Virus record (IMG/VR): IMGVR_UViG_3300033145_003233
Coordinates: 434,001-498,000 of that record
DNA: 64,000 nucleotides
Direction: 5' to 3' (one strand)
The stretch's first letter is position 1, and each line of letters begins with the position of its first letter. The position numbers and the translations under genes are program-made. The notes under the pieces were generated by a model that worked only from the letters and a program-made list of their open reading frames with translations, was not told where the DNA came from and made no database searches. Shown piece after piece: positions 3,367 to 52,467 of the stretch.

Positions 3367-4680
3367 TTAACCTATCTGTAATTGCAGCTTTTTAATAGAT
3401 TCTTCTTTATCTTCATTATATTTAATTCTATGAAGAACAACACTATTCTCCCTACAAAACACCCCATCTAATTTATCTTTTTTTTGTGTCCTTTTAAATA
3501 ATTTTTCTACTTTTACCCTATCCTTACAACCAAACCCTATAGGTTCAAAATGCTGTATCCCATCATATTCTACCATAACTTTAACATTATTTTTCTCCAT
3601 CCAAAAATCACAATATCTCTTATGGTTATAATCTCTATATTTATCCCATATTTTTTTATGGGAAATAATATCCCAATCTTTAAAATATTTTTCTAAAATT
3701 TCTTTTACTTTACCCTCATTTTTATATCTACAAGCAGGACAACCATCACCCCTTCCTGTTCTATTTCTAATAACGGCTTCCCATATATGCCCTTGAGAGC
3801 ATACCCACCAAGCTTTTCTTGAACTACCCCGAGTAACAGTATTAGGTGTTAAATCTTGATTTTTTTTATAATCCCATTCTTTAGCTATATCTGGAAACAA
3901 AGTTGCTAAACAATTATCTTTACAAGTCTTTTGTCCAGAACAATAAGGGCAATTAGTCCCAACGCTTCTGCTAAGCGTAGTCGCTTGCCATTCATGCCCT
4001 TTCTCACATATCCACCATACTTTCTTTTTGCTATTTCTTGCAGTTATATTTTTAGGAGTCAAACTTCCATTTTTAACAGAATGCCATTCTTTAGCAACTA
4101 TAGGATTGAGAGTAGCTAAACAATTATCTTTACAAATCTTTTGACCGGCGCAACAAGGACAATTAGTTCCGCTATGTGTTCTACTAGATATCTTAGCTTT
4201 CCACCCATGACCATAAAAACATATCCACCATACTTTCTTTCCGCTGCCATGCACCACAGTTTTAGGAGATTCTCTTTTATTTTTCTTATAATCCCATTCC
4301 TCTGCTATCCTTGGAAATCTATTTTCCAAACAATTATCGTTAGAGACCCTATGCCCAGCACAATAAGGGCAACCATTACCGCCATGAGTCACATTAGTTC
4401 GACAATTGATAGAAGCTTGCCATCTATGTTTTATATTAGAAGAACAAGTCCAGAATGCCTGTTTATGACTACCACTCGTTAATTTTTTAGGATCTAACCC
4501 TAATTTCTTATTCTTTTCACAATCCCATTCCGTTTCAATTAGTTTTTTATGTGTTTCATAAACTGATACTTTTTTAACCCCAACGTGATAAAAATACTTA
4601 GCACAACATTTATGAGAACAATATTTTTTTCTCAATTTTTCTAATTCCTTACCACACCATAAACATTTTTTATTCATCAT
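3367..4680 (-). CDS. Zinc-ribbon (treble-clef, DUF4379-type) repeat protein with C-terminal Vsr-like/EDxHD-type endonuclease domain; homing-endonuclease-like
   Basis: N-terminal CxxC...YCSxxC finger, four EW..KN...W.C..GH.W......GCP.C repeats, and C-terminal YCDFW...VEYDGIQHF...LHRIKY. The start is probably ATG 4680 (GGGGGGTG SD) rather than the track start at 4710. Confidence 0.82.
   Translation of the reverse strand: MMNKKCLWCGKELEKLRKKYCSHKCCAKYFYHVGVKKVSVYETHKKLIETEWDCEKNKKLGLDPKKLTSGSHKQAFWTCSSNIKHRWQASINCRTNVTHGGNGCPYCAGHRVSNDNCLENRFPRIAEEWDYKKNKRESPKTVVHGSGKKVWWICFYGHGWKAKISSRTHSGTNCPCCAGQKICKDNCLATLNPIVAKEWHSVKNGSLTPKNITARNSKKKVWWICEKGHEWQATTLSRSVGTNCPYCSGQKTCKDNCLATLFPDIAKEWDYKKNQDLTPNTVTRGSSRKAWWVCSQGHIWEAVIRNRTGRGDGCPACRYKNEGKVKEILEKYFKDWDIISHKKIWDKYRDYNHKRYCDFWMEKNNVKVMVEYDGIQHFEPIGFGCKDRVKVEKLFKRTQKKDKLDGVFCRENSVVLHRIKYNEDKEESIKKLQLQIG
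3722..4555 (-). repeat. Four tandem ~66-aa zinc-ribbon repeats
   Basis: Repeated DNCLATLxPxIAKEWxxxKN and W.C..GH.W...GxxCPxC blocks in the translation. Confidence 0.9.
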
Positions 4681-4858
4681 CACGATTACACCCCCCATTA
4701 TATGCCACATCTTGCACTCTATTTATATCGACATGAATATTATCATTATATAATCTTCTAATTTCTCCCAAAATTTTATGATATGCCTCATCTGGATCTC
4801 TATAACTCAAAAATAAAGAGGCTAACAGACTAATTCTATCATTATTTTCTTTTAACAT
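4670..4858 (-). CDS. Small hypothetical protein (about 62 aa), first gene of the leftward cassette
   Basis: GGAG SD about 8 nt before ATG 4858. The track start at 4891 lies inside the palindrome/promoter. The stop overlaps the start region of the zinc-ribbon gene. Confidence 0.5.
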   Translation of the reverse strand: MLKENNDRISLLASLFLSYRDPDEAYHKILGEIRRLYNDNIHVDINRVQDVAYNGGCNRDDE

Positions 4859-5142: not shown

Positions 5143-8100
5143 TTAATTATTTGTAGCTGAAGTTATTGTGATAATGGGAGTAGTAATTGTTGTGCCAAAA
5201 TCCAAACTGTCATGAGGCAGAACCTCGGCCCGATACTGCTGACCCACAAGCACAATACTATTATCTATTGTAGATGTATGAGTTCCCAGACTGGTAGTAA
5301 TATGGCCTCTGTAATCTTCTACATTATATGTAGTTAATAAATTACCATCATGATCATTAAAAATATAAACTGGATCAGCAGGCCATTCTGTTTCTCCTGG
5401 ATTTTTTCTATACCATCTAATTTCTGTCTGGTCAAATTGTCCACTTTCATCCACGTCGCCAATAAAATTTACCTCAAAATCCAGAAAATACCATGTTAAT
5501 ATTACATCATTATGTTCATCATGAACATTGCGAATATAAGACACATTAGAAACAGTAGGAAGGGCATTTTGAACCACAACCACAGGGCTTGTAATAATAT
5601 CCCCTACAACATTACCTGTTTTTGGTATAACCTGAACAAATATAGAGTTAAGCATTCTAAGGCCATAATCCCTATAACTTTCTGTTCCCACTTCATTAGG
5701 CCAAATTTCATGAATCGGAGCTTGACCTACTCCCCTATCCTCTCCATATATTCCTCTCTTAAAGACTTCATCATTAACATACCATATAATCTCTGATTGG
5801 TTTTCTTGTCCATCAGAGAAAAATACTGTGTCTATAGGAGGATAAATAATGGCCTTTAAATCACCAGCTAACCTACTAGTGATCTGACCTTCATTATCAG
5901 ACATTACTGTTATTTGATCTAAAACAGGAGTGGATTCTACAACTTCTGCCATATTAGATTTTACCCTAGAGCTATATAATTCCCCATCGCTTACTTGTAT
6001 CTCAAAATAAATCCTATCTCCTGAATTCAGTATGGAATCAGATTGTTTTTTTATCCATGTCTCAATATCCTGGATATTAGTTAAATCGTCAGGATATGAT
6101 AAAGAAGTATTAACATAAATAGGATCCATTGGATCTGCTATGTCATTCCATTTGGTTAGATTTTCTAAATAATTTATAACGCTTCCATTAATAAACCACC
6201 GTATTCTCCTTTGAGATATATCTTCTTCTTCGAAATTAGAATCATAATACACATAAGAACTCTCAATAGTGCTAAATCTATTAGAAGTTTCATTTTCAAT
6301 AGCCACAGACTGAGCTTCAGGGGCTGCTTTGGCTAATGGTGGTAACAAATCTTTCCCAGTAGTATATAAATAACCAATACCATATATCTCTAATTCATCT
6401 AATTTAGTTTTATTGGTTAATTTCATACCTATTTTATATTCTCCCGCATTAATAATACCTATCTTATAATCTCCATCTTGATAGTCAGAAGATAATGCAT
6501 AATTTAACACTACTATCCCATCCCTAGGATATAATCTATAATAATTAGTTGGAACAACTTCATCTGATTTGTTATATAGAAGAACAGCAGAGAACGGGTC
6601 CCATGAACCGTATTCTGTTTTTAGTGTGAAGAGATCAACTTTTGCAAGAGGTTCTTGTTGAAACTCTGCTATATCTTGAGAGAATCTTATGGGAATTACT
6701 ACTTTTCCATTTTGATTTACTGCCGGTTGAGAATCAAGAGAATAATCGTTCCAGTTGTGGGAATCAGATTTAGCAACTCCGACATCAATCTGATGATCAT
6801 TAATTTCATTTGCGTCTACCGCTAAAGTTATTTGATATGGCTGAACATCTACTTCTTCTTTGTTGAGATATAAATAAGCTACCTTATAAGCATTATATGT
6901 AATTTGAACAGAAGTAAGAGCAGGAGAATCTGGAGTGGCATCAGATACATTATCATTAATACTAGTAATCAACACTATCTTAAATTTTATATATCTTGCC
7001 AATAAATTTTCAAAATCAACCGCATCTGCATAAGTGTAATTAGCATCTATAGCTGTAAAATTATAACCATCAACGCTCGTCTCAATAGCCCATGTAGCAT
7101 TAGAATCCGAAGAAGGGATAGTAAAAGATATTGCGATGTGATTTATTAACGCCTCTTCTCCCAAATCAGCTATAAATTCATATGTCCCATACCCTAGAGA
7201 TCCCACTGTCTCTCTGTAAAATATCCCTATAATATCATCTAGATAAGCTTCATCATTTACCGTAAGAGCTTGACCCCCAGTTAAAAATGATAATTTATTT
7301 ATATTTTTTGTATCAGAAGAGTTAGCCTTAACAGACAAAGTTACTGGCTCTACAATCGCCATATTAGATATCAATACAGGAACATTTTTATCTCCATCAA
7401 TGTCATTAACTTCTGTAATAGCATTATCAAGAGAAGAGATAGAAACATTAGACTCATTATCAGTAAACAAATAAATGGTCTTTCTCTTATCATCAACATC
7501 ATTGTCAGATAAAACTCTTGAAGCGACAACGATTGCATCATACATAGTTGAAGCGCCAAAAGGAGTAAAATTCTGAAGTTTATTTATCTCATCGATAATT
7601 GTTGAACTAGAGCTAGTATTGGTTCCCAAGACAGAACTAACAGATGGAACCCATTCAGAATCATTATAACAATCTATAATAATATTGCTATTTGTTCTTT
7701 TCTTTGTTTTTTGGAACAAAGAAGTTACATCATTAACTTCTTCTTCTTGAGGACTCGTTCCTCTATCAACTGTTCTATTATAAAAAGAACTTCCATTGAG
7801 AGAATAAACAGTTACCTCAATTGATAATTTATATGGACTCCTTATTACTCCTGCCTCTATTTTTATAACAACTGGTTCCTTATTAGTATCTGTAATCTGC
7901 TCATCGGTTCTAATACCTCCCTGAGAAACGATATTGATATTAGCCACAGTAGCTTCCTCTATAGATGATGTCTCTTCAAATAAATCTTCTGAACGAGGCA
8001 ATATAGTTATAACACATCTGCCACTATTTACAGGGATAGAGTCCGAAGTAAAAAGAACAGGATAAACAACGGTTTTGTCTTCCAATTGATTTAAAGTTTC

Positions 8101-8262
8101 TGTTTCTGTTGTTGAAGATTGATCTCTGAATTTTAGAAATCCCCTTACAACCACAGTTAATGGTTCTGTTACATATCTACCACCCTTTTTAATATCTATA
8201 GGTATAGAGACAGATTGTTTCCCATCTATCTTGCAACTGATTGTTTTATATTCATTTCCCAT
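5143..8262 (-). CDS. Multi-domain virion/adhesion protein: C-terminal half of a vWA domain, jelly-roll-like domain, three Ig-like (IRWxxNG-type) domains
   Basis: GASTMYDAI...IYLFTDNESN...LSFLTGG (vWA second half); RYIKFKIVL...SPALTSVQITY; RRIRWFING, IIWYVND and EIRWYRK modules. Confidence 0.65.
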   Translation of the reverse strand: MGNEYKTISCKIDGKQSVSIPIDIKKGGRYVTEPLTVVVRGFLKFRDQSSTTETETLNQLEDKTVVYPVLFTSDSIPVNSGRCVITILPRSEDLFEETSSIEEATVANINIVSQGGIRTDEQITDTNKEPVVIKIEAGVIRSPYKLSIEVTVYSLNGSSFYNRTVDRGTSPQEEEVNDVTSLFQKTKKRTNSNIIIDCYNDSEWVPSVSSVLGTNTSSSSTIIDEINKLQNFTPFGASTMYDAIVVASRVLSDNDVDDKRKTIYLFTDNESNVSISSLDNAITEVNDIDGDKNVPVLISNMAIVEPVTLSVKANSSDTKNINKLSFLTGGQALTVNDEAYLDDIIGIFYRETVGSLGYGTYEFIADLGEEALINHIAISFTIPSSDSNATWAIETSVDGYNFTAIDANYTYADAVDFENLLARYIKFKIVLITSINDNVSDATPDSPALTSVQITYNAYKVAYLYLNKEEVDVQPYQITLAVDANEINDHQIDVGVAKSDSHNWNDYSLDSQPAVNQNGKVVIPIRFSQDIAEFQQEPLAKVDLFTLKTEYGSWDPFSAVLLYNKSDEVVPTNYYRLYPRDGIVVLNYALSSDYQDGDYKIGIINAGEYKIGMKLTNKTKLDELEIYGIGYLYTTGKDLLPPLAKAAPEAQSVAIENETSNRFSTIESSYVYYDSNFEEEDISQRRIRWFINGSVINYLENLTKWNDIADPMDPIYVNTSLSYPDDLTNIQDIETWIKKQSDSILNSGDRIYFEIQVSDGELYSSRVKSNMAEVVESTPVLDQITVMSDNEGQITSRLAGDLKAIIYPPIDTVFFSDGQENQSEIIWYVNDEVFKRGIYGEDRGVGQAPIHEIWPNEVGTESYRDYGLRMLNSIFVQVIPKTGNVVGDIITSPVVVVQNALPTVSNVSYIRNVHDEHNDVILTWYFLDFEVNFIGDVDESGQFDQTEIRWYRKNPGETEWPADPVYIFNDHDGNLLTTYNVEDYRGHITTSLGTHTSTIDNSIVLVGQQYRAEVLPHDSLDFGTTITTPIITITSATNN

Positions 8263-8264
8263 TT

Positions 8265-11200
8265 TTATATATCAAATATAATATCTACAGTACTTTCCTC
8301 CCTAGCCGTAGTATATCCTCCCACCAAATAAATATAAGGAGTTCCTGTTACTCCAGAATAAACAGCACTAGCACCATGCTTTGCTTTCAATAAAGAAGCC
8401 ATGGCTAACGATGGATTATCATCGTAACTGCTTAGATAAGAAACAGTAGAACCTTGAATAGATATTTTTTCTAATATATCAAGACTTGAATCATCATCAT
8501 TAGCTCCTCCCATTATATAATAATCAGAAGTATCATATGTAGACGGATCAAGATCATATCTAACCATTGCTGATTGGAATTTAGGAATAGGAAAATCTCC
8601 GAGCAAACCACTTCCAAAATTAATCCATTCTCCTGAGGAAGGGACAGTAAAAGATTGTGCTATATTAATATAAAAATCTTCTATTGGATAAATAAACTGA
8701 TCATCAGATTCTATGGCCCCATTAAACACTATAATTTTATTATCATAAATTAAAGTTAAAGGGAATATTCTCTGATAAGTGTTTAATTCATTAGTTCTTA
8801 AAGCACCAGAATATTCCCAGCTATCATCACCTATAGAATATCTTAAAATTCTTTTATTATAATTACGTATGCTAAAATTACTTGAACTTATTACAGCATC
8901 CTGTATTCCACCTATAATATATATATAATTATTAGAGAGCACATCACAATATTGAGCAGCACCTAAAGCCACTCCTGTTTTTTCTTCCCATGCTCCTCCA
9001 TCACCAATAGATGGCATATCAGATAGCTGCTCCCAGGCCCCTGTATCAGTATGATAAACTTCAACCAGAGAGCTTACAGATATTTGACCACCCGAAGTAG
9101 AATCTGCACCTATCCCCCCTATTAAATATATATCATTATTTACAACAACAGACATACCTCCAAATCTATGAGATAACATAGGAGGACCAGTAGTCCATGT
9201 TTCTGTTAAAATATCATATATTTCATTCTTGTTAGACACATCTAAACTATTATTTTTCAACCCTCCCATAACATAAATCTTATTCCCTACCACACCAATA
9301 AATGAATCTCCTCTATTTTCCGACATACCAGGAACATGAACCCATTCATTATCAGAAATATTATATCTTGCCATAGTTGATGAAAATGGAGTTTCTTCTA
9401 TTATCTCAGCATCTTCATCAAGAACACTAGGTTCATCTACTAAATTAGGAAGAGTTACAATCTCATCTTTATAATCCAACGTAAGATTAAAAATAGCCCC
9501 GACATGCCTATCTGTTTTTTCATTTTCATCGTAAACAGAATATATTTCTAGATTCTCAGTTATACTATCTTCCTCTGGTATTTTTGTAGCGGCAACAGTC
9601 ACATCCACATAACTATATCCCTCATCTCCATCAGTTTGAGTATAATAAATACTACTGCCAGCTAAAAAGAAATTATTGCTAGAATTATTTCCCATAGCAG
9701 TATAAACAGGAGTGCCATCTGGAACAGGCTCTCCTTTCCATGATACTTGGACTCTAATATCTATATCAGAATTATGAAGCAACAAGGTATCATTATCTTC
9801 ATCTCGAAAACTATTATTACCTACCTCAGTCACAACTCCAACTAAATAATCATCATCTGGATCTCCATCAGATTCACTATAAAAATAATTAGTTACTCTT
9901 CTCCACCTCGCACTTATAGATAATGGTTCTGCCAAACAAATTGGACAAGGTGGGACTCCATTATAAAAAGTTCCTCCTCCAGATAGTACCAGCGGCTGAT
10001 CATTAACAAACAGAGTTGTTGTACCAGAAATATAAATAACCGGATTCCATTCAGGCAAATCGCAGTTCGTCAACATTCCACTATTTCGACCAAGACATAG
10101 ACAATCATTTATTTCCTTATCTCTATCACATTCCCCCTCTGGCACATATATTCTACCAGCACCAGGTACAAATTTATTAACCCTTATATAGATATAAGTG
10201 ATATCTGATTCTTCAGCATCATTTAATTCTATAAATGCGCTACCATTATCTATAAAACCATCATCGCCCACTGTCAAATAACGACTTCCTGTATATGAAT
10301 CTATTTCTTCATAAATCTCTCCATGCAATATCTCTACTTCATTGCCCCCTCCATTTATCTGCACAACCTGTCCAGAATTAAGCATTAATTCCTGCAAGTC
10401 ATCCTGAGTAGCACAGCTTCTAAAACAAGTAGCAGATGCAAAATCAGAAGAAAGAGCCACAGCTGGATTTCTACTAATTTTAATACGCTTATAATGAGAA
10501 CCATCTGCCCATAAAGGATTTTGATCGGCTATCATCCATCCACCACCACCCCATGTCTGAGTAAGCCCTGTTCCTCTCCACCCTCCATCTATCTCCATTA
10601 AAAACCTAGCTTTAAATTTATCATACTCAAGAGGATTATATCTTAATGACACAAGCTGTTTTGCACTAGCTGTCAATCCTTCATAAACTACAGTTACACT
10701 TATTTCATGAGTCTCATCCATCTCACTGTCACTTTTCGGAATAGGCCCTAGAAATACATTCCTAGCTACTCCGCTTCTGGTATAAGAATATACACCATTA
10801 GTAAGAGGGACATTATCAATAGAATAAATAGTTCTAACCTCTTGCCCTTGCAACTGAGAGATACCCCATTGAACAATAGTTTGATCAGAAGGATAAATAA
10901 TCAAAGAACGATCATAATCATTAGTCTCATAATTAGGGTAATCAGGATTAACAATAAATACTGTAGATCGTTGCTCAGACACATCTCTACCATCAACTTT
11001 AGGAACAGAAGCCTGAATATCCATTTTAAGAACACTTTGGAATAATATATATATATCTTTTATAGACGAATAACCTGCTTGAGATGCCTTTACAAACAAC
11101 CTAACTGCCTGAGGCATATCTGGAGCATACAAAGGGATATCAACATATGAAATAGGAGTTTGAACTATTGCCCCGCCATGCCCCACTTGCTCTTCAATTC

Positions 11201-14200
11201 CTTGTAAAATAGACATAACGTTGTCAGGAGGCGATACTGTTTGACTCACTTGTAACTTGTCCCCTTCAAGAGGAGAATTATTATCAGACCCTGCATTTCC
11301 ACACAAATTATCTGAAGCCGCATCCCAAACAGCTATCTGGACAGAACCAGACTCAATAGGCTCTCCTTTATATTTAACCTTCACCCTAGAAACAAAAGGA
11401 GCAGATGCTTTCATGTATATGCCATTAAAGCATTCATAATCAACACGTAACGTTTTCTCCTGTGTTACTTCATCAGTTGAATAATAATAGCATCTTTCGC
11501 ACACTGACTTATTATCTCTGTTCTCTAATTCTATTTCCCAAGGATTAGTAAAGCTTACTGTAATAGGTTTAGAATAATATTCAAATATATTGGAGCTACT
11601 AACCTCCTCAGTTTCTACCCCATCTATTTCATCTATGAGACCTTCAATAATACTAGCATATTCCTCTAATGCATTTGTTGGAGCGGCATCTGTATTAGGA
11701 GGAGTATATCCGTCCTTAGGAATAACCGCTTTCAACTGGATAGTAAAACTAGCACTTTGAATTTGAGAAATTATCCTATTATCAGAACTCATCTTCAAAG
11801 TAGCCTTCATAAAACCTTCATCTGTTCTAGTTACAAAGAAATCATAAGCATCTATATCATTAAAAGATATCAAGTTTCCTGAACCAAAAACATCATCAGC
11901 TTGAGATTCCCTAGTAATAGAAGCATTTATATACATTTTAATTAAGGTATCTTCTGATACAGGAGATCCAAATTCATCTGTAATGGAAGCATACAATAAT
12001 ATTGTTTGATCAAAATAAGCATCTATATCTTCTGGACTTTTAACAGGAGTTTTCCATCCTATGCTTATAGTGTTCTCATCAACTAACTCATAATTTAAAT
12101 TTTCAACTTCTACTAAGGGAATTGTTCCACCATTAGCCGAAGAGCTGGGAATACTAGCTGCATGTAAGAATTCCTCTACCTGCGTGCCCACAGAATTATA
12201 ATTAGAAGGTCGTCCATATTTGTCTATATTAACAATAGTATAATAAGCAGTTACATCATTAGTTAAATTTCTATGAACAAATTTTGTATCCGTAACAATC
12301 CCAGTAAAAACAAGTTGATTATCATTCCCTCCGTCCTTATCAACCACCGGATAATTAGAAGAAGAATAATAAATTTTAACCCTAGATATTCTAGAGTCTA
12401 CAGGAGAAGATTGAGACCATCTTAAATATATTTTTTTATTTCCTGGAGTTATTAATTGACCTACAGATGGCTCTTGTGGAGAAGGCAATGATGATGACAA
12501 CTCTACAAAATAATCTTCTATAATCGAAGGCGGAATTATTATTTCCAAAGACGGAGAATCAGATAGAAAACTCACATTACCTCTAGAGTTCTTAGAAAAT
12601 ATCCTATAATAATATTTTTCCCCAATTACGAAATCATCAGAATCTGAGACATAATGTTTCCCTAACAATACATTTTCTTGATATATGACCGTCCCATCTT
12701 CTTCCCAAGAAGGAACATGATTCTCATTTTTTAAAATTATAATTTCGCCATCTACATCATAATCCTGAGGCACTTCATATTCAAAAACTACTAATCTATC
12801 TCCATTATCTTCCTTAATCCCTATATCTTCAATATCTACTTCTACTCCATCATCATCAAAGATCGGATTAGAAAGAATCTGAGTTGAGATATATGTTGCG
12901 CCCCTAACAACATTATGAATACTAAGCTCTGTTATTTTTCCACGAAAATAATTATTTATACCAGATGTTAACCTATGAGCACCAATAGTAAAATAATAAT
13001 TGCCATCAGTCGCCAATGTACCTGTATCTGTCGAAGTACTTACTTGTTCTACTGCATCGATATAAAAAGTAGCAGCATTACTAAGCCCTGCCGCCTGATT
13101 CATAGCAACACAAACATGCTGCCATTTATAAAGCTCAACATTCCCAGTTGTCGTCCAATATCTCCCCTGTTGAGTCGGAGAAAAATTTCTATCTGCATAT
13201 AAGTTATTGCCTTCTACCCAAAAAGAAAAATTTTCTCTCTCTCCATTTGAAGAACTAACAATCACCATCTCATCAGTTGAATAAGGATAAATCCAAGCCA
13301 TTATGGTAAGAGTAGGTTGATCTCCATCAAAATCTCTATAGAGATTAGTTTCCCCATTAATAAAAGCATAATCATTCTCTCCATCAAAAAATAAACCAGA
13401 AGTTCCTGACGGAACGAATTGAGAAGAATACCATGTAGGATCTTCTTTATTAAAAACAGGAGTATTCCCGCCATCACTGAAATCGTATAAGTTTCTCCCC
13501 TCGCCTTCATCCATATGCCACAGAGCTATAATATTTTCATCTCTATTAACTCCGCTTCCAGTAAGAGGAATCCCCTTAGTTAAATCATCAGAATCTACAA
13601 TTGTTCTAAAAACTGATATTCCTCTTGGAACAACCCTTCCCTTAGGAACAACCTTTATTCTCACCCCTTCACTGAATCGCAAATCCTTATCATAAGTATA
13701 AACAGTATAATAATATGTTTGACCTTCTGTTAGATTCTCATCAAGAACCTTACTAATAAAACTATCTTGCACTAATTCTCCATCAACCACGGATGTTGGA
13801 TAACGACTGTTATTTCTGATAACTCTGATACCATCATAATTAGCATTATCATCCGCAAAGAACATGGCACTTAATGTATCAATATCATAAGGATTAATGC
13901 CCTCTTCTTCTATAATTCCAAAAAATAAAACATTAACAAAATTAGCCCCATATTCTACTAAATTATATGTTATATCCCCAGGATAGTTTATATCTATCTT
14001 CCTAATTAGATCTTTAGCTATTGTGTGTCTAAAACCATTACTATCATTCCATGTCATACTTCCGCTTTGATCTATAACAATTGTTACTATTCTATCTTCT
14101 AGCTCTAACTCTATACGTTCTGTCCCGTCATCTTCAGAAATAATTCTTGTATTATTTATCTTCTGATTTTCCTTATCGGAAAAAACATTAATAATCTCAG

Positions 14201-14372
14201 TTTCTGCATTTGAAGGAGGAAGGACCATCTTATTAGTATATTCATCAAAAGCATCAAAATCACTAGAGACACTAAAAGCGTGTCTTTTATCATAATTCAT
14301 ATGCCAGACATTTCTCTGTAAGGATGATTCCCCATTTAATATCTTATAATATTCTAATAAATTTAATGGCAT
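8265..14372 (-). CDS. Giant adhesin-like tail protein: N-terminal half of vWA, FN3-like domains, LamG/ConA, Ig-like domains, C-terminal Kelch propeller
   Basis: IVTIVIDQSGSM (MIDAS DxSxS); YYYTVYTYD and YYYRIFSKN FN3-type strands; ALWHMDEGEG...FDGENDY...IMAWIYP...WQHV...FRGKITEL (LamG); KIYVMGG, DIYLIGG, YIYIIGG and YIYLVGG Kelch blades at about 8290-9380. Confidence 0.75.
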   Translation of the reverse strand: MPLNLLEYYKILNGESSLQRNVWHMNYDKRHAFSVSSDFDAFDEYTNKMVLPPSNAETEIINVFSDKENQKINNTRIISEDDGTERIELELEDRIVTIVIDQSGSMTWNDSNGFRHTIAKDLIRKIDINYPGDITYNLVEYGANFVNVLFFGIIEEEGINPYDIDTLSAMFFADDNANYDGIRVIRNNSRYPTSVVDGELVQDSFISKVLDENLTEGQTYYYTVYTYDKDLRFSEGVRIKVVPKGRVVPRGISVFRTIVDSDDLTKGIPLTGSGVNRDENIIALWHMDEGEGRNLYDFSDGGNTPVFNKEDPTWYSSQFVPSGTSGLFFDGENDYAFINGETNLYRDFDGDQPTLTIMAWIYPYSTDEMVIVSSSNGERENFSFWVEGNNLYADRNFSPTQQGRYWTTTGNVELYKWQHVCVAMNQAAGLSNAATFYIDAVEQVSTSTDTGTLATDGNYYFTIGAHRLTSGINNYFRGKITELSIHNVVRGATYISTQILSNPIFDDDGVEVDIEDIGIKEDNGDRLVVFEYEVPQDYDVDGEIIILKNENHVPSWEEDGTVIYQENVLLGKHYVSDSDDFVIGEKYYYRIFSKNSRGNVSFLSDSPSLEIIIPPSIIEDYFVELSSSLPSPQEPSVGQLITPGNKKIYLRWSQSSPVDSRISRVKIYYSSSNYPVVDKDGGNDNQLVFTGIVTDTKFVHRNLTNDVTAYYTIVNIDKYGRPSNYNSVGTQVEEFLHAASIPSSSANGGTIPLVEVENLNYELVDENTISIGWKTPVKSPEDIDAYFDQTILLYASITDEFGSPVSEDTLIKMYINASITRESQADDVFGSGNLISFNDIDAYDFFVTRTDEGFMKATLKMSSDNRIISQIQSASFTIQLKAVIPKDGYTPPNTDAAPTNALEEYASIIEGLIDEIDGVETEEVSSSNIFEYYSKPITVSFTNPWEIELENRDNKSVCERCYYYSTDEVTQEKTLRVDYECFNGIYMKASAPFVSRVKVKYKGEPIESGSVQIAVWDAASDNLCGNAGSDNNSPLEGDKLQVSQTVSPPDNVMSILQGIEEQVGHGGAIVQTPISYVDIPLYAPDMPQAVRLFVKASQAGYSSIKDIYILFQSVLKMDIQASVPKVDGRDVSEQRSTVFIVNPDYPNYETNDYDRSLIIYPSDQTIVQWGISQLQGQEVRTIYSIDNVPLTNGVYSYTRSGVARNVFLGPIPKSDSEMDETHEISVTVVYEGLTASAKQLVSLRYNPLEYDKFKARFLMEIDGGWRGTGLTQTWGGGGWMIADQNPLWADGSHYKRIKISRNPAVALSSDFASATCFRSCATQDDLQELMLNSGQVVQINGGGNEVEILHGEIYEEIDSYTGSRYLTVGDDGFIDNGSAFIELNDAEESDITYIYIRVNKFVPGAGRIYVPEGECDRDKEINDCLCLGRNSGMLTNCDLPEWNPVIYISGTTTLFVNDQPLVLSGGGTFYNGVPPCPICLAEPLSISARWRRVTNYFYSESDGDPDDDYLVGVVTEVGNNSFRDEDNDTLLLHNSDIDIRVQVSWKGEPVPDGTPVYTAMGNNSSNNFFLAGSSIYYTQTDGDEGYSYVDVTVAATKIPEEDSITENLEIYSVYDENEKTDRHVGAIFNLTLDYKDEIVTLPNLVDEPSVLDEDAEIIEETPFSSTMARYNISDNEWVHVPGMSENRGDSFIGVVGNKIYVMGGLKNNSLDVSNKNEIYDILTETWTTGPPMLSHRFGGMSVVVNNDIYLIGGIGADSTSGGQISVSSLVEVYHTDTGAWEQLSDMPSIGDGGAWEEKTGVALGAAQYCDVLSNNYIYIIGGIQDAVISSSNFSIRNYNKRILRYSIGDDSWEYSGALRTNELNTYQRIFPLTLIYDNKIIVFNGAIESDDQFIYPIEDFYINIAQSFTVPSSGEWINFGSGLLGDFPIPKFQSAMVRYDLDPSTYDTSDYYIMGGANDDDSSLDILEKISIQGSTVSYLSSYDDNPSLAMASLLKAKHGASAVYSGVTGTPYIYLVGGYTTAREESTVDIIFDI

Positions 14373-14384
14373 TAATTTCTTTTC

Positions 14385-16322
14385 TTAAAATTTAATAGCT
14401 GATGGAGATATATTATATTCATCATTATCTACTAATTCCCATACTACAAAATTATCATGAGTAGATCCAGAAGAGGACATTACTAGATAATAACTCCCTT
14501 CAAAATCAGACATACTAGTATACCCATGATTATCATCTAATACCCTTATATCAAAATTATACCAATCATCTTGAACAACCTGAGTTATAGTATTTTTATA
14601 ATCATACATATAAAGAGAAGACACTGGTGCTTCTCCAGAATTATAAACTTGCATATGTATAGTTAAATAAGGACTGATAATATAATCTGGGCCTTCCCCA
14701 TAAGGAATAGTGCTATCTGCCTCTATATATAATTTATCTATAGCAGCCTCGTCCTCCTTTATTCTTATTCCCAGAACATGTTCTCTTGTGTCCGGCAGGA
14801 CTATCGTAGTATTCACCCATGCCCACTCTGGAATAGAAGGATTGTTTACAACTTGATCAATAGTTTTTGAAATCTCTCCATCTATTAAAATATCTGCTTT
14901 AAACCTCTCAGAGTTAGATGAAAGACATCTAATCCATAAATTATAAGTATCCGATTGAATAGCTCTTATCGGATAATTAATAACACTAAAATTAGAAAAA
15001 GAACTATCTTTCAATATCATATATCCGTTACCCGTAAAATCATCTAACTCATCAGAAAATATAACAATATTATCTTTAGAGGTAATAGTTAAAAAATTAG
15101 TAGCATCTATCACTGTTTTAGTTGTATTGTATATCCCCCAATAATCACTATTATTTTTTCCGACCCTTTTTAAATATACTGTTGCTTTAGATGGAAGGTA
15201 CTCTGCATTAACATCAAATTCCTGTGCCAATCTCAACCTAACAGGAGGGTCATCATATAAATATACTGCTCCAGCATTTGACGCTGCCTCATCATTATAA
15301 GCACCGCCTACAATCAAAAACCTACCCGAAATAGACACTGCATTGCCAAAATTATCTTCAGAAGAAGAATCGCCACCAGTTATTTTTTTAAGATGACCCC
15401 ATCCTCTCTTTTTATAAAAAACATCTGCAACTCCTATATTCCTAGCCGCTGGTGAACCGATGATAATATAATCACCATTTATATAAACTGACTCTCCAAA
15501 ATGATCTCCAGCAGGATTGTTTTCATCAATTCCAGATAATTTATCCACCTCATACCATGTAGTGGTATATTTATAAACATAAGCTGCCCCAGAATTAATA
15601 TCTCCAGAACTAGAATCCTTGTATCTCGCTCCAACTACAAAATAATTACCAGAAGCAGACACAGAAACTCCAAACTCGTCATTAATAGCACCATCTGATG
15701 CCAATATCGTTTGAGTTAATTCCCATAAATTAGTATCTGTATTTTTTATATATACGTATACCGCTCCTGTTTTCTGGTTGTCTCCTTTGGCCCCCACTAT
15801 AATAGAAGTGTCATTAGTAGTAACCGAACAACCAAAATAACCATTCTCTTCAGAGGCAGTAAGAGTAATAGGATTACCGGAATATGCCCCCCATATATCT
15901 GTCGCGGTTTTTTTATATATATATACAGACCCTTTATTAGAATCACTCTCGGAAGCTCCAATAATAAGATAATTCTCACTGATAGCCACCGAACCTCCAA
16001 ATCCAGGAATGCTAGCTTCTGCTTTTGTCTGTAAGGGATTATCCGCAGTAGTATTCTTATTATATATTTTAACCTCTCTCGAAACAGTATCTCCAACTAC
16101 AAGATAATCTCCATACATCGCCAAAGAATTTCCTCTCATACTTATCCCCCCAGGAATCATAGATTCCCATGTGCCGTTGATACTTCTTTTATATAAGTAT
16201 GTTTTAGTATTTGATGGCTCACCCACGGCCGCAAAATATCCATCAATCACTACAGATGTTCCGAAATTATAATCAGCACCTGATGATGGACTCATTTTCT
16301 TTTCTATTTGAGAATACGACAT
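14385..16322 (-). CDS. FG-GAP repeat beta-propeller protein with C-terminal carbohydrate-binding-like domain
   Basis: Repeated FGxSVxISGxYxIVGA...GAVYVY units. The C-terminal TYNLWIRC...WAWVN...LGIRIKEDEAAIDKLYI...GEGP resembles a CBM-like jelly roll. AGGA SD. Confidence 0.8.
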   Translation of the reverse strand: MSYSQIEKKMSPSSGADYNFGTSVVIDGYFAAVGEPSNTKTYLYKRSINGTWESMIPGGISMRGNSLAMYGDYLVVGDTVSREVKIYNKNTTADNPLQTKAEASIPGFGGSVAISENYLIIGASESDSNKGSVYIYKKTATDIWGAYSGNPITLTASEENGYFGCSVTTNDTSIIVGAKGDNQKTGAVYVYIKNTDTNLWELTQTILASDGAINDEFGVSVSASGNYFVVGARYKDSSSGDINSGAAYVYKYTTTWYEVDKLSGIDENNPAGDHFGESVYINGDYIIIGSPAARNIGVADVFYKKRGWGHLKKITGGDSSSEDNFGNAVSISGRFLIVGGAYNDEAASNAGAVYLYDDPPVRLRLAQEFDVNAEYLPSKATVYLKRVGKNNSDYWGIYNTTKTVIDATNFLTITSKDNIVIFSDELDDFTGNGYMILKDSSFSNFSVINYPIRAIQSDTYNLWIRCLSSNSERFKADILIDGEISKTIDQVVNNPSIPEWAWVNTTIVLPDTREHVLGIRIKEDEAAIDKLYIEADSTIPYGEGPDYIISPYLTIHMQVYNSGEAPVSSLYMYDYKNTITQVVQDDWYNFDIRVLDDNHGYTSMSDFEGSYYLVMSSSGSTHDNFVVWELVDNDEYNISPSAIKF

Positions 16323-39400: not shown

Positions 39401-40494
39401 GACGGACTATCTATAATTTGTAAAGCATTCCATATATCATCAGACACATGAATTTGAAAATCCTCATATGGCTCTTTGGGAGCTATTACAACATCTTTAT
39501 TAGCTACAATGTAATTATCCAAAACCGTTTTTTGAGTAGCAACAAACACCTTATTTATATTAAACCTAGGATCTCCAGCATCCTCATAATTTTTATCTGG
39601 AGAAGTATAAGCATGTAACGCCATACCATTATTTAATAATGTTACAGAATTATGGAATATTTTACAAATCTTATCTGCATCCCCACCCAAACTAACAGAT
39701 GCTGTACTACCTTCAGCACAACGCATCGGCAAACCAACAGATGGAACCGATATTCCAATATCTATCTCTTCTGGAGCAACTGGGGCCTCAATACAATCCC
39801 CAGGTATACTCCATGCACCAGGGACCACATATGCTGGATCGGCTGGATTACACCTAGGGTCAATCGCCGCATGCATAGCTAGAGTTTGAGGTAAAACATT
39901 AAGATACAAATTAGTAAATTTTTTATTAGTATAATTATCTTCTTCGGAATATAAGTAAACAGGCATTTGCCTTACTGCACTTAGCTCATTACTGCCTACG
40001 ACATCTCTACCTTTAAAATTAATTGACCCTGTACCATTTTTATTAATAATAATTCTAAATAATTTGTCATTTATAGAAATAGTACTCTTACTATTTGGCT
40101 TACCCACGATATGAATAGAACATAATCCATCCATCCCAATAAAAGATGGAGTTATAGAAATTTTCTCACTAAATTCACTCGCCTCATCCTTTATGCTAAA
40201 AATGGAAGGACAAATTTGAGCAGTTTTGTAAGAACCATCTGATTGCTTTTCTTCTATATGGGCAAAAATAGAAATAGCAGCTTGAGACGAATGTTCTGGA
40301 ATATTAAGATTCATTACCCCCATACAGGATTTGTTATCCATACGCTGAAATGATCCAATATCAACCTTAACCCCATGCGTAGCATTTTCCATATTAATGC
40401 GAAATTGTTTTGCCCCAATTTCAGAAATCTCAAATTTCAAAGATTTAGCATCTTCTAATATTCCAGATGGAGGATATAATATAAGATTAGCCAT
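36499..40494 (-). CDS. Large structural protein with dispersed propeller blades and a C-terminal HFR-like domain
   Basis: LHIVWESNRG, LHLSWQSNRD and MITWHDDRDGNYNIY blades; FDAASIADRII...YDTGFIS module; YNFSIEFYHD. The start overlaps the glycosyltransferase stop by 8 nt. Confidence 0.55.
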   Translation of the reverse strand: MANLILYPPSGILEDAKSLKFEISEIGAKQFRINMENATHGVKVDIGSFQRMDNKSCMGVMNLNIPEHSSQAAISIFAHIEEKQSDGSYKTAQICPSIFSIKDEASEFSEKISITPSFIGMDGLCSIHIVGKPNSKSTISINDKLFRIIINKNGTGSINFKGRDVVGSNELSAVRQMPVYLYSEEDNYTNKKFTNLYLNVLPQTLAMHAAIDPRCNPADPAYVVPGAWSIPGDCIEAPVAPEEIDIGISVPSVGLPMRCAEGSTASVSLGGDADKICKIFHNSVTLLNNGMALHAYTSPDKNYEDAGDPRFNINKVFVATQKTVLDNYIVANKDVVIAPKEPYEDFQIHVSDDIWNALQIIDSPSVSDIYVVLFNAMIGFQRIKIVERTTDEYTGVRTLTGEVGNTNVKISNWLFCVNAVFYRSSIYPSLYLDGITIPYIRDGSGNYLQTINISVASNSKYVGLEEETYVYLIAEAVAETKSQLFFYSFSAGRTSLFDSENYGWEQLTDTGNNKNPRAYTDSINNLHIVWESNRGDICQIYYGVIGPSSPSLVSSSVSSYVDKYAEFSSTDTKSFSSIDIPSMERVVGSGSNPIPEYETSDLVPVAWAIEEDTIGSVTERSSSGDLNDLLITVNPVDEEAMAFLPLEIVTSVDNPSVLGVFPYSQFNYQMSFKLAATVNQSNSIVSDDDYNGIIIEEKEIDKLFDSWKDGFTVSIDENVDNQPVYVKNNNKFVIGKSDNIFDRIIPIIGSYKDTPDPSTERFRIEILKSDNNLKDFSLGLLFEKSYFRATNIETPSAYYDRGYGDPYTPEETEVIFTGRAKLVVLIKTEDISDERSDYIIVREFPEILEINELSSYTIILNYKSIGSDEVANVLDTYDRTYNNKFIGTITLLIDDAPKFSQSFISTLSDDYNYFDLGFGVPYGGYYVADKMSPSKFGVFENVSMNLEINDVRITSPTFAHNSAIINLPVSVQDSTELRVIDESSINLPDNTTRYNPSNNLLSLNFRAEEDIVSYASSYDLAGNNFYSVYDVEDIDKISVEFDAASIADRIIIAAGSTVLYDTGFISTPVVSQGFNFDVDIISYDIISVTVESGGDDSSWSFIVYFKKIYSNNGFLQVPITIEGINQSVDVSGGTCNDLHLSWQSNRDRYWNIFYTNSVDKLSPFRYDTKITNTESNSLRPSVSVNRNGSRMITWHDDRDGNYNIYAARSLSGYSCDEDKCERKMLDAFKDYIVECLVSFEFEVDLSGAYNFSIEFYHDSSLTNLYKTISIEGAENRWFLNGDSMSLSYDADDNLLGVVLNNGDTVSISYRPHKDDEIFDMVLYAKLLYSVT

Positions 40495-41587
40495 ATAACT
40501 CTTTCACCATCCCCATAAACATATTGCTAATTTTTGAATAATTAAATCTTTCCCTCACATAAGAATATGCTCTATCAGTTTTAATTTTTATATAATCTTT
40601 GTGATTAATTACATATCTCATAGCTTTTTGTATTTTGTTTACCTCTATAAATGCCCATTTTTTATTTCTAAATTGTGGAATATTATCCATGTTATTATGA
40701 AGAATAAATCCGCTTGGCTCAATTAGAACGGCTGTATCTTCGTTAGCATAATCTTTACACCCAGCATAATTTGTTATAATAACAGGAATCCCCAATGCCA
40801 TACATTGAAGACCAGGATACCCGAATCCTTCTCCCATAGTAGGAGAGATCAAACAATCTACAGATTTTATAAAATTTGGCAAAACCTTTTCATTAAACAC
40901 TTTATTTTCAAAAATTATAGGGGCAAATCCTTTGTTTATTCCCAATTGACCCCTAAGCTTATTAAAATATTGCTCTGCCTTTTTAGGCTTGTCAGTTTTT
41001 ACTAATAATTGGACTCCATCAGTATCTTTAAATTCCCTACCCCATGCTTCCAACAATTGTTTATATCCCTTTCTTTCTTTCCAAATACCTATGAATAAAA
41101 AAGTATATTTATCAAAATTATCTAAAGGAACGATATCTCTATGATAAGTTTCAATATCTATACAATGTGGGATATAATAAAGCGGCTTTTTAATCGTCAT
41201 ATGTGAGAAAATCTTATAATTAAATTGAGAAGGAACTATGATAGCATCGTTTTCATTAAGGATATCCACCCAATGATCGGGAGGCTGAAATGTTTCAAAA
41301 GTAGCAAAACCTATACTTCTATGATGTTTCTTTTTTACCCTTTTTTGGATATTTGGGATACAATGATATATTAAAATTCTTTCAGGATTATCCTTCTTTT
41401 TTGCCATCCTCATAAAAAATTCATATTTTTCATCACTAATAGCTGGTTTAGATGGCCTACCCCCAAAAGTAGTAATTTTGATATCAAAATAACCAGTTTT
41501 TTCTAAAGAAAAAATATAATTTTGAGCTGCTTGGGAATAACCTGACTGATTTAGGAAACATATCCAATTAAGCTTGATTTTTTCCAT
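40487..41587 (-). CDS. Glycosyltransferase, GT-B fold, family 4-like
   Basis: SGYSQAA N-terminal loop, TFETFQPP.HW...DAIIVPSQFN, YYIPHCID, FLFIGIWKERKGY, SPTMGEGFGYPGLQCMALGIPVI. Confidence 0.9.
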   Translation of the reverse strand: MEKIKLNWICFLNQSGYSQAAQNYIFSLEKTGYFDIKITTFGGRPSKPAISDEKYEFFMRMAKKKDNPERILIYHCIPNIQKRVKKKHHRSIGFATFETFQPPDHWVDILNENDAIIVPSQFNYKIFSHMTIKKPLYYIPHCIDIETYHRDIVPLDNFDKYTFLFIGIWKERKGYKQLLEAWGREFKDTDGVQLLVKTDKPKKAEQYFNKLRGQLGINKGFAPIIFENKVFNEKVLPNFIKSVDCLISPTMGEGFGYPGLQCMALGIPVIITNYAGCKDYANEDTAVLIEPSGFILHNNMDNIPQFRNKKWAFIEVNKIQKAMRYVINHKDYIKIKTDRAYSYVRERFNYSKISNMFMGMVKELYG

Positions 41588-52449: not shown

Positions 52450-52467
52450 AAGAATATATTTTCATAA

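What the first reader, a model, noticed from the sequence alone, without database searches (positions are those of the whole stretch)
7219..14096. A vWA/MIDAS domain apparently split between two adjacent genes
Seen: the 2035-aa protein carries only the first elements of a vWA fold (residues ~93-142, 13947-14096: beta1 IVTIVIDQSGSM with MIDAS DxSxS, helix 1, beta2 YNLVEYG) and then turns into FN3, LamG and Kelch modules. The next gene (1039 aa, starting 2 nt after the stop) carries what looks like the missing remainder (residues ~204-348, 7219-7653: IIDEINKL..PFGASTMYDAI with the MIDAS Thr, KTIYLFTDNESN with the MIDAS Asp, and LSFLTGGQAL). I found no DxSxS in the 1039-aa protein and no vWA C-half in the 2035-aa protein. 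Established: MIDAS needs DxSxS...T...D in one fold, and vWA domains mediate metal-dependent adhesion or assembly. Inference: the two polypeptides complement in trans to build one metal-binding vWA that clips the two virion proteins together, a naturally split domain used as an assembly latch or adhesion switch.
Basis: partly seen in the sequence, partly recalled or inferred. Interest (0 to 1): 0.85.

Follow-up and report, generated by a model that had tools for sequence, protein, structure and literature searches.

The report
Two-gene vWA domain in huge phage
Two adjacent giant genes of a 548-kb phage each carry one complementary piece of a single metal-binding vWA domain; in related phages both pieces sit about 2,000 residues apart in one protein, so this is an old interrupted domain that a later gene split spread over two proteins.

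Summary
Gene A (8265..14372, minus strand, 2035 aa) holds only the first third of a vWA fold: beta1 with DQSGS, alpha1, beta2. Gene B (5143..8262, minus strand, 1039 aa) holds only the rest. Pfam VWA_2 matches profile positions 2-50 in A and 52-106 in B.

The window has exactly one copy of each half. Neither protein models as a complete vWA alone.

Comparative data change the interpretation. Across the family, 237 proteins carry the N-half. It lies 1,407-2,855 residues upstream of the C-half in one polypeptide (89 proteins), or in the gene just upstream. The halves are never contiguous and, wherever neighbouring sequence was available, never apart.

Deep branches of the family tree are fused proteins of about 3,000-3,400 aa. 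The window's clade is split at a linker after the Kelch propeller, and other lineages are split before it.

All five MIDAS ligand positions are invariant or nearly so in 121 paired sequences.

The best reading is an ancient discontinuous vWA with a giant multi-domain insert, spread over two chains by gene fission and most likely rebuilt in trans. Co-folding could not be tested. The virion role and the "latch" function are not shown.

The parts
8265..14372 (-). Gene A, 2035 aa: N-terminal region, vWA N-half, FN3-like, LamG, long beta-rich region, C-terminal Kelch propeller
   Evidence: ORF list, translation, Pfam, homologues
13857..14096 (-). vWA N-half (A residues 93-172): beta1 94-101, MIDAS loop 1, alpha1 114-129, beta2 134-141, then a segment (145-157) that stays disordered in the single-chain model, and a helix at 164-172
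   Evidence: Pfam VWA_2 positions 2-50; AF2 model; family profile hit at A 81-185, E 2e-47; weak PDB hits, mostly to vWA proteins; translation
14058..14072 (-). MIDAS motif DQSGS (A residues 101-105), part of the invariant D-x-S-G-S-M-T-W-N-D block
13638..13835 (-). FN3-like domain directly after the N-half (A about 180-245). This is the first module of the insert.
   Evidence: AF2 strands 181-241 and Foldseek FN3 hits
12888..13319 (-). Laminin_G_3 / concanavalin-like domain (A 352-495), inside the insert
   Evidence: Pfam E 6.9e-16
8283..9395 (-). Kelch beta-propeller (A about 1660-2030), the last module before the gene boundary
   Evidence: Pfam Kelch_6 E 6.8e-25 and related families
8260..8267 (-). 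Gene junction: TAA stop of A (8265-8267), 2-nt spacer, ATG of B (8260-8262), with B in the -1 frame. It corresponds to a continuous linker in the fused homologues P0104 and P0116.
5143..8262 (-). Gene B, 1039 aa: N-terminal beta-sandwich, vWA C-half, CBM32/discoidin-like sandwich, further beta-rich domains
7207..7707 (-). vWA C-half (B residues 186-352): strand 194-200, alpha2 219-229, alpha3 240-251, beta4 263-267, alpha4 278-289, beta5 296-301, alpha5 309-327, beta6 331-335, last helix 338-352
   Evidence: Pfam VWA_2 positions 52-106; AF2; Foldseek hits to vWA 4fx5 and integrin beta-I; family profile E 2e-76; translation
7459..7551 (-). The segment holding the two MIDAS ligands contributed by B: Ser238 (7549-7551, in the position of the MIDAS Thr) and Asp268 (7459-7461)
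   Evidence: invariant in the alignments; translation
6883..7200 (-). CBM32 / F5-8 type C-like beta-sandwich directly after the C-half (B about 355-460)
   Evidence: AF2; Foldseek CBM32 hits

Best explanation
Genes A and B are the two chains of what is, in most related huge phages, one multi-domain protein of about 3,000-3,400 residues.

The hallmark of this family is a discontinuous vWA/MIDAS domain. The first part (beta1 with DxSGS, alpha1, beta2, beta3) lies near the N-terminus. The rest (alpha2 to beta6 and the last helix, carrying the Ser and Asp that complete the MIDAS) lies 1,400-2,900 residues downstream. The stretch between is a string of FN3, LamG, beta-rich and Kelch-propeller domains, placed at the beta3-to-alpha2 crossover of the fold.

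Inferred: the two segments pack side by side (beta1 next to beta4) into one alpha/beta domain with one metal site. In single-chain relatives this would close the polypeptide into a large loop.

In the window's clade a gene fission in the linker after the Kelch propeller left the N-half on A and the C-half on B. If the domain forms, it must form between two polypeptides and so hold A and B together 1:1. The tight gene junction, with spacers of 2-10 nt, would favour coupled synthesis.

The intact MIDAS most likely binds a divalent cation and an acidic group of a ligand or partner.

Shown: complementarity, obligate co-occurrence, invariance of the five MIDAS positions, fused ancestry, repeated fission, and incompleteness of each half alone.

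Inferred: physical co-folding, metal binding, and the adhesive or structural role.
For: - Complementary Pfam halves, 2-50 and 52-106 of 107.
- In fused relatives the same profile passes threshold: P0127 46.9 bits in two stretches, P0104 27.6 bits.
- One N-half and one C-half only in the window.
- AF2 of A 1-285 gives beta1-alpha1-beta2, then a disordered stretch, then FN3. It has no vWA match by Foldseek.
- AF2 of B 1-487 gives a four-stranded alpha/beta half that matches vWA 4fx5 and integrin beta-I domains, but lacks beta1, alpha1, beta2 and the DxSxS loop.
- B aligns to P0104 residues 2020-3047 at 45% identity, and to the C-terminal third of P0127.
- Loci L008-L017 have single ORFs of 3,236-3,969 aa. 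Loci L001-L007 are split.
- All 89 proteins with both halves keep them 1,407-2,855 residues apart, median 1,973.
- A second fission site exists. In L018 (1261|1474 aa) and L019 (1772|1071 aa) the N-half is in one gene and the C-half in the next.
- In the tree, split forms make one clade (support 96) with two fused members nested inside. All deeper branches are fused.
- MIDAS positions D101, S103, S105 (A) and S238, D268 (B) are invariant or nearly so in 121 pairs, Neff 109.
Against: - No direct test of co-folding.
- Covariation between the halves was inconclusive. An alpha1/last-helix signal seen with 69 pairs disappeared with 121. The MIDAS-proximal block was only borderline, P about 0.05.
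- B has an extra conserved strand (194-200, followed by invariant W204 and near-invariant P206). In the B-alone model this strand joins the sheet, and it might stand in for beta1.
- Each Pfam hit in A and B is individually below threshold, and PDB sequence hits are marginal, E 0.02-0.05.
- A domain that must wait for about 2,000 residues of translation before it can fold is unusual.
Confidence: 0.6

Rival explanations
1. The halves do pair, but between different copies, in a domain swap. The N-half of one unit completes the C-half of a neighbouring unit. The vWA then acts as a head-to-tail polymerisation or ring-closing joint, rather than an intramolecular clasp or a simple A:B heterodimer.
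For: Gene fission at two different sites is tolerated, so covalent continuity is not needed for pairing. An N-half that emerges about 2,000 residues before its partner could as easily meet another chain's C-half. This rival uses the same conservation evidence as the main explanation.
Against: Nothing here distinguishes cis from swapped pairing. In the split clade A has only an N-half and B only a C-half, so a simple A:B pair satisfies both, and a polymer would need further interfaces.
Confidence: 0.15
2. The two segments are independent modules that do not form one fold. The N-half would be a small beta-alpha-beta unit packing on its own neighbours. B's region would be a reduced four-stranded Rossmann-like domain in which strand 194-200 replaces beta1. 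The resemblance to complementary vWA parts would then be a relic of an ancestral domain.
For: The B-alone model gives a compact alpha/beta unit with strand 194-200 in the sheet at pLDDT about 75-90. Covariation between halves is not significant. The hits to vWA are weak.
Against: It gives no reason for all five MIDAS ligand positions, three on one piece and two on the other, to stay invariant over 121 sequences that are otherwise only about 22-60% identical. It does not explain why the two pieces are always co-inherited. The segment after beta2 in A stays disordered when modelled alone.
Confidence: 0.17
3. A and B are made as one polypeptide in this phage too, by programmed frameshifting or readthrough at the junction. 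On this view the split exists only at the DNA level.
For: B lies in the -1 frame, 2 nt after the stop. Fused relatives exist.
Against: Among split loci the spacer varies from 2 to 10 nt. B is in the -1 frame in four loci (L001, L002, L004, L006) and in the +1 frame in two (L005, L007). In L018 and L019 the junctions are TAA-ATG and TAATG. No conserved slippery site or frame relation exists. B starts with a Met in the split forms. TAA, TAG and TGA all end ORFs in these loci, so no stop codon is reassigned.
Confidence: 0.04
4. The split is an assembly or sequencing artefact, a false frameshift in a gene that is really fused.
For: A single indel could create it.
Against: 62 B-type proteins of about 1,010-1,060 aa (plus two truncated ones) and more than 50 A-type proteins of about 1,900-2,100 aa come from independent samples and assemblers. 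They form one clade, and their junctions differ.
Confidence: 0.02

Closest known systems
Canonical vWA / integrin I-type domains with a MIDAS (Pfam PF00092, PF13519)
   Same: The order of secondary-structure elements is the same. The DxSxS, Ser/Thr and Asp metal-ligand triad of motifs is present, along with the TGG motif near beta6. Foldseek matches B's half to vWA 4fx5 and to integrin beta-I domains.
   Different: Known vWA domains are contiguous, about 180-250 residues on one chain. Here the fold is interrupted after beta3 by 1,400-2,900 residues, and in this window it is divided between two gene products. The MIDAS Thr position is Ser.
Nested or inserted-domain adhesins built around vWA folds: the integrin beta subunit (beta-I inserted in the hybrid domain) and Gram-positive pilus tip adhesins such as GBS104 (PDB 3tvy/3tw0) and RrgA (own knowledge for RrgA)
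   Same: These are large adhesive proteins in which a vWA-type domain takes part in domain-in-domain architecture. The only sequence hits of B's C-half in the PDB are 3tvy and 3tw0. Integrin beta headpieces are among the fold hits.
   Different: In those proteins the vWA is the guest, or carries short inserted arms of tens of residues. Here the vWA is the host of a multi-domain insert of about 2,000 residues. No known member is encoded by two genes.
Naturally split proteins that are rebuilt in trans, for example split DnaE inteins and donor-strand complementation in chaperone-usher pili (own knowledge)
   Same: One fold is completed by segments from two polypeptides, and the complementation doubles as an assembly joint.
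   Different: There is no splicing chemistry. The break arose by fission inside an insert, not by cutting the domain. Trans assembly is inferred here, not demonstrated.
Phage two-gene fusions made by programmed frameshift (lambda G/GT type; own knowledge)
   Same: These are adjacent phage genes in different frames with almost no spacer.
   Different: The frame relation and spacer are not conserved among homologues, so frameshift fusion is not supported.

Membership tests
vWA / MIDAS domain (PF13519, PF00092) | DxSxS motif at the end of beta1 | tested here: met
   A101-105 reads DQSGS. D, S and S are invariant or near-invariant in 121 sequences.
vWA / MIDAS domain (PF13519, PF00092) | Thr (or Ser) in the alpha2-alpha3 loop and Asp at the end of beta4, which complete the MIDAS | tested here: met
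   B S238 is S in 120/121 and T in 1. B D268 is D in 121/121. Both lie on the other gene product.
vWA / MIDAS domain (PF13519, PF00092) | Profile match above the curated Pfam threshold | tested here: inconclusive
   A scores 18.7 bits and B 17.3 bits against a cut-off of 27. Fused relatives pass: P0127 46.9 bits in two stretches and P0104 27.6 bits.
vWA / MIDAS domain (PF13519, PF00092) | One compact six-stranded alpha/beta fold | not testable with these tools
   Each half models as a partial fold: A gives beta1-alpha1-beta2, and B gives four strands plus helices. No two-chain prediction was available.
vWA / MIDAS domain (PF13519, PF00092) | Domain contiguous in sequence on one chain | tested here: not met
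   The halves are 1,407-2,855 residues apart in all 89 single-chain members, and on two chains here.
Naturally split (two-chain) domain | The parts of one fold are encoded by separate genes, and neither part is complete alone | tested here: met
Naturally split (two-chain) domain | The parts associate physically to rebuild the fold | not testable with these tools
   Only indirect support: obligate co-occurrence and joint invariance of the MIDAS residues.
Programmed-frameshift fusion of adjacent phage genes | Conserved frame relation and slippery site at the junction | tested here: not met
   Both -1 and +1 frames occur, with spacers of 2-10 nt, and TAATG or TAA-ATG junctions in other lineages.
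Phage virion (tail fibre / baseplate) protein | Homology to known structural proteins, or location in a structural module | tested here: inconclusive
   There is only a weak PHROG 'virion structural protein' hit on the Kelch part, E 1.3e-4. No PHROG hits were found for B or for the neighbouring giant ORFs. Downstream genes are an HNH endonuclease, a helicase, an exonuclease and a methylase. The contig is classed as viral by IMG/VR.

The most novel reading that the evidence does not exclude
This would be the first natural two-chain vWA/MIDAS domain. Two giant huge-phage proteins would be joined because one supplies beta1-alpha1-beta2(-beta3) with DxSxS and the other supplies the rest of the fold with the Ser and Asp ligands. 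The metal site would then exist only in the complex, and could make the A-B joint (or ligand binding) depend on a divalent cation. In single-chain relatives the same domain would clasp the ends of a loop of about 2,000 residues, one of the largest insertions known in a small domain.
Probability: 0.45. Interest if true: 0.75.

Novelty: new variant of a known kind. Interest (0 to 1): 0.6.

Why it matters
If the halves do co-fold, this family shows that a small Rossmann-like adhesion domain can tolerate a multi-domain insert of 1,400-2,900 residues at its crossover. It would also show that evolution can then cut the gene at different places without losing the domain. That would be a natural experiment in protein fragment complementation.

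It would add a way of joining giant phage proteins: a shared metal-binding domain as the joint. It would also offer a natural template for split-vWA tools.

For annotation, it explains why these proteins escape vWA detection, since each half scores below threshold. It also warns that 'half domains' in neighbouring genes of huge phages may be real.

Tried and rejected
- tblastn of B against 50,697 deposited phage genomes found no match.
- PHROGs gave nothing for B or for the neighbouring giant ORFs.
- PDB sequence searches with profiles of each half gave only marginal hits, E 0.02-0.05. The best N-half hits (PTMP1, CLCA1, CobT) and both C-half hits (GBS104 adhesin) are vWA proteins.
- hhalign of each half-profile against the single complete vWA found inside P0127 was uninformative, because the template was a single sequence.
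- Covariation (MI with APC) between halves:
  - With 69 pairs, 5 of the top 25 inter-half pairs linked alpha1 to the last helix.
  - With 121 pairs this vanished, 1 observed against 0.98 expected.
  - An a-priori MIDAS-proximal block reached only P about 0.05. I treat this as inconclusive.
- One search was an empty script.
- Programmed frameshift and an assembly artefact were considered and rejected on junction diversity.
- A search for contiguous relatives with the N-half profile, across 1.84 billion representatives, found 238 clusters. Those examined are giant proteins or short sequences taken to be fragments, none with the halves closer than 1,407 residues.
- A literature search for split, bipartite or discontinuous VWA returned nothing. 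Two huge-phage surveys mention only unrelated vWA proteins.
- A fold search against viral models gave only generic vWFA and carbohydrate-binding tail-protein hits.
Full report
**Observation**

The window is AT-rich (about 33% GC). All its large ORFs lie on the minus strand. Gene A (8265..14372) encodes 2035 aa and gene B (5143..8262) encodes 1039 aa. The junction is TAA, two bases, then ATG in another frame.

A residues 93-172 read DRIVTIVIDQSGSMTWND...ITYNLVEYG.... B residues 186-352 contain FGASTMYDA, IYLFTDNES and LTGGQ.

VWA_2 (107 positions) matches A 97-146 to profile positions 2-50, and B 212-269 to positions 52-106. Both hits are below threshold (18.7 and 17.3 bits, cut-off 27) but exactly complementary. 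LamG and Kelch in A are confirmed. FN3 directly after the N-half is confirmed by fold.

Profiles built from each half find exactly one N-half and one C-half in all six frames of the window. A has no C-half and B has no N-half. The only DxSxS in either protein is at A101.

**Each half alone**

AlphaFold2 was run with family alignments of 114 and 99 sequences.

For A 1-285 it gave beta1 (94-101), alpha1 (114-129) and beta2 (134-141). Next came a stretch with pLDDT below 50 (145-157), a short helix, and an FN3 domain. Foldseek found only FN3 matches and no vWA.

For B 1-487 it gave an N-terminal beta-sandwich. Then came an alpha/beta unit with four strands (194-200, 263-267, 296-301, 331-335) and the expected helices, followed by a CBM32/discoidin-like sandwich. 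Foldseek matched the vWA protein 4fx5 (E 9e-5), integrin beta-I domains and CBM32 modules.

So neither protein models as a complete vWA by itself.

**Relatives**

The contig is IMG/VR UViG_3300033145_003233, 547,943 bp, a huge phage.

B has 62 full-length homologues of about 1,010-1,060 aa, plus two truncated ones. A has close homologues of about 1,900-2,100 aa. But P0104 (3047 aa), P0116 (3060 aa) and essentially all distant homologues (2,900-3,450 aa) are longer.

B aligns end to end with P0104 residues 2020-3047 at 45% identity, and with the C-terminal third of P0127.

In 17 IMG/VR loci, seven (L001-L007) have two genes. The other ten (L008-L017) have one ORF of 3,236-3,969 aa.

Every single-chain member carries the N-half near its start and the C-half far downstream. 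An exhaustive profile search of 1.84 billion representative proteins with the N-half found only 238 clusters. Those examined are giant proteins or short sequences taken to be fragments.

In the 89 proteins with both halves, the gap between them is 1,407-2,855 residues, median 1,973. No member has the halves contiguous. The discontinuity is the ancestral, universal state.

**Gene fission**

A maximum-likelihood tree of the B-equivalent region puts all split forms in one clade (SH-aLRT 96). The fused P0104 and P0116 are nested inside it, and all deeper branches are fused. At least two changes of state are required.

The fission point in the window corresponds to a short linker between the last Kelch blade and B's first beta-sandwich.

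Junctions differ among split loci. Spacers range from 2 to 10 nt, and B is in the -1 frame in four loci and the +1 frame in two. This argues against programmed frameshifting and against an assembly artefact.

A second, independent fission site exists in more distant lineages. In L018 (1261|1474 aa) and L019 (1772|1071 aa) the break lies before the Kelch propeller. The N-half is in the first gene and the C-half in the next (E 1e-33 and 1e-27).

The polypeptide can therefore be cut at different places. The two halves are always kept, in order, in the same or adjacent genes.

**Do the halves form one domain?**

The strongest argument is conservation. In 121 paired sequences (Neff 109) whose overall identity falls to about 22-30%, the five canonical MIDAS positions are D 121/121, S 120/121 (one T), S 121/121, S 120/121 (one T) and D 121/121. 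Three of them are on the N-half and two on the C-half. They are among only 13 invariant columns of 274.

The break falls between beta3 and alpha2. That is the crossover of the doubly wound fold, where the sheet divides into beta3-beta2-beta1 and beta4-beta5-beta6. Such a crossover is a natural site for insertions (established knowledge of the fold).

The segment after beta2 in A is disordered when modelled alone, as expected for an element waiting for a partner.

Some evidence weighs against this reading, or at least does not support it:
- Covariation between the halves was inconclusive.
- B has a conserved extra strand (194-200, followed by invariant W204 and near-invariant P206) that might substitute for beta1.
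- No two-chain prediction could be run.

I therefore give about 0.6 to the statement that the halves build one vWA, in trans in this phage.

**Function**

The proteins are strings of adhesion-type modules: FN3, LamG, Kelch and CBM32-like. Neighbouring giant ORFs carry FG-GAP, fn3, Ig and InlB B-repeat hits, and a glycosyltransferase is embedded among them.

This fits a surface, adhesive or fibre-like role. No structural-protein homology was found, and the genes downstream of B are DNA-metabolism genes. 'Virion protein' and 'latch or switch' remain inference.

**Comparison and novelty**

The closest known entities are:
- ordinary vWA/MIDAS domains;
- the nested-domain adhesins built around vWA folds, namely integrin beta subunits and pilus tip adhesins such as GBS104, which is the only PDB sequence hit of the C-half.

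In those proteins the vWA is contiguous, or carries only short arms. I found no description of a split or discontinuous vWA in the searchable literature.

This is a new variant of a known kind: a known domain in an unprecedented discontinuous form that is, in this clade, encoded by two genes.

Noticed in passing
P0127 residues 2104-2290 (also P0181); no counterpart in the window: Some fused relatives carry an additional, complete and contiguous vWA (PF00092; DASTS...GSN...SDG) inserted about 80 residues upstream of the conserved C-half. One protein then holds one whole vWA plus the two separated halves.
   Followed up: partly
window 3367-4710 (-): An HNH / DUF4379 homing-endonuclease-like gene lies downstream of gene B, after a roughly 430-nt gap. 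ORFs of that size are not at this position in most related loci, which suggests a mobile insertion.
   Followed up: no
L001:16969-18513 versus L008:18480-21401: The DNA helicase gene downstream in the window's own contig is about half the length (514 aa) of its counterpart in a related phage (973 aa). It may be split or interrupted.
   Followed up: no
window 14385-63942 (-): An unbroken run of 13 ORFs of 328-3824 aa on one strand, seven of them over 1,000 aa, with near-zero spacers and a GC skew of about -0.25. They carry FG-GAP, fn3, propeller, Ig, LamG and InlB B-repeat hits. One GT4 glycosyltransferase (40487-41587) sits in the middle. None matches a PHROG structural family.
   Followed up: partly
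window 52001-54000: A local GC rise to 0.405 (background about 0.33) inside the 3' part of the 3824-aa ORF.
   Followed up: no
P0081 (2432 aa), a homologue of gene A: This A-type protein also carries FG-GAP repeats (PF14312), the domain of the separate gene just upstream of A in the window (14385-16322). That suggests further fusion and fission among the neighbouring giant genes.
   Followed up: no
L003:10001-10310: In one split locus the B-type ORF is open only from about 10187, although the protein match starts at 10001. This may be a frameshift or sequencing error at the 5' end of that copy.
   Followed up: no
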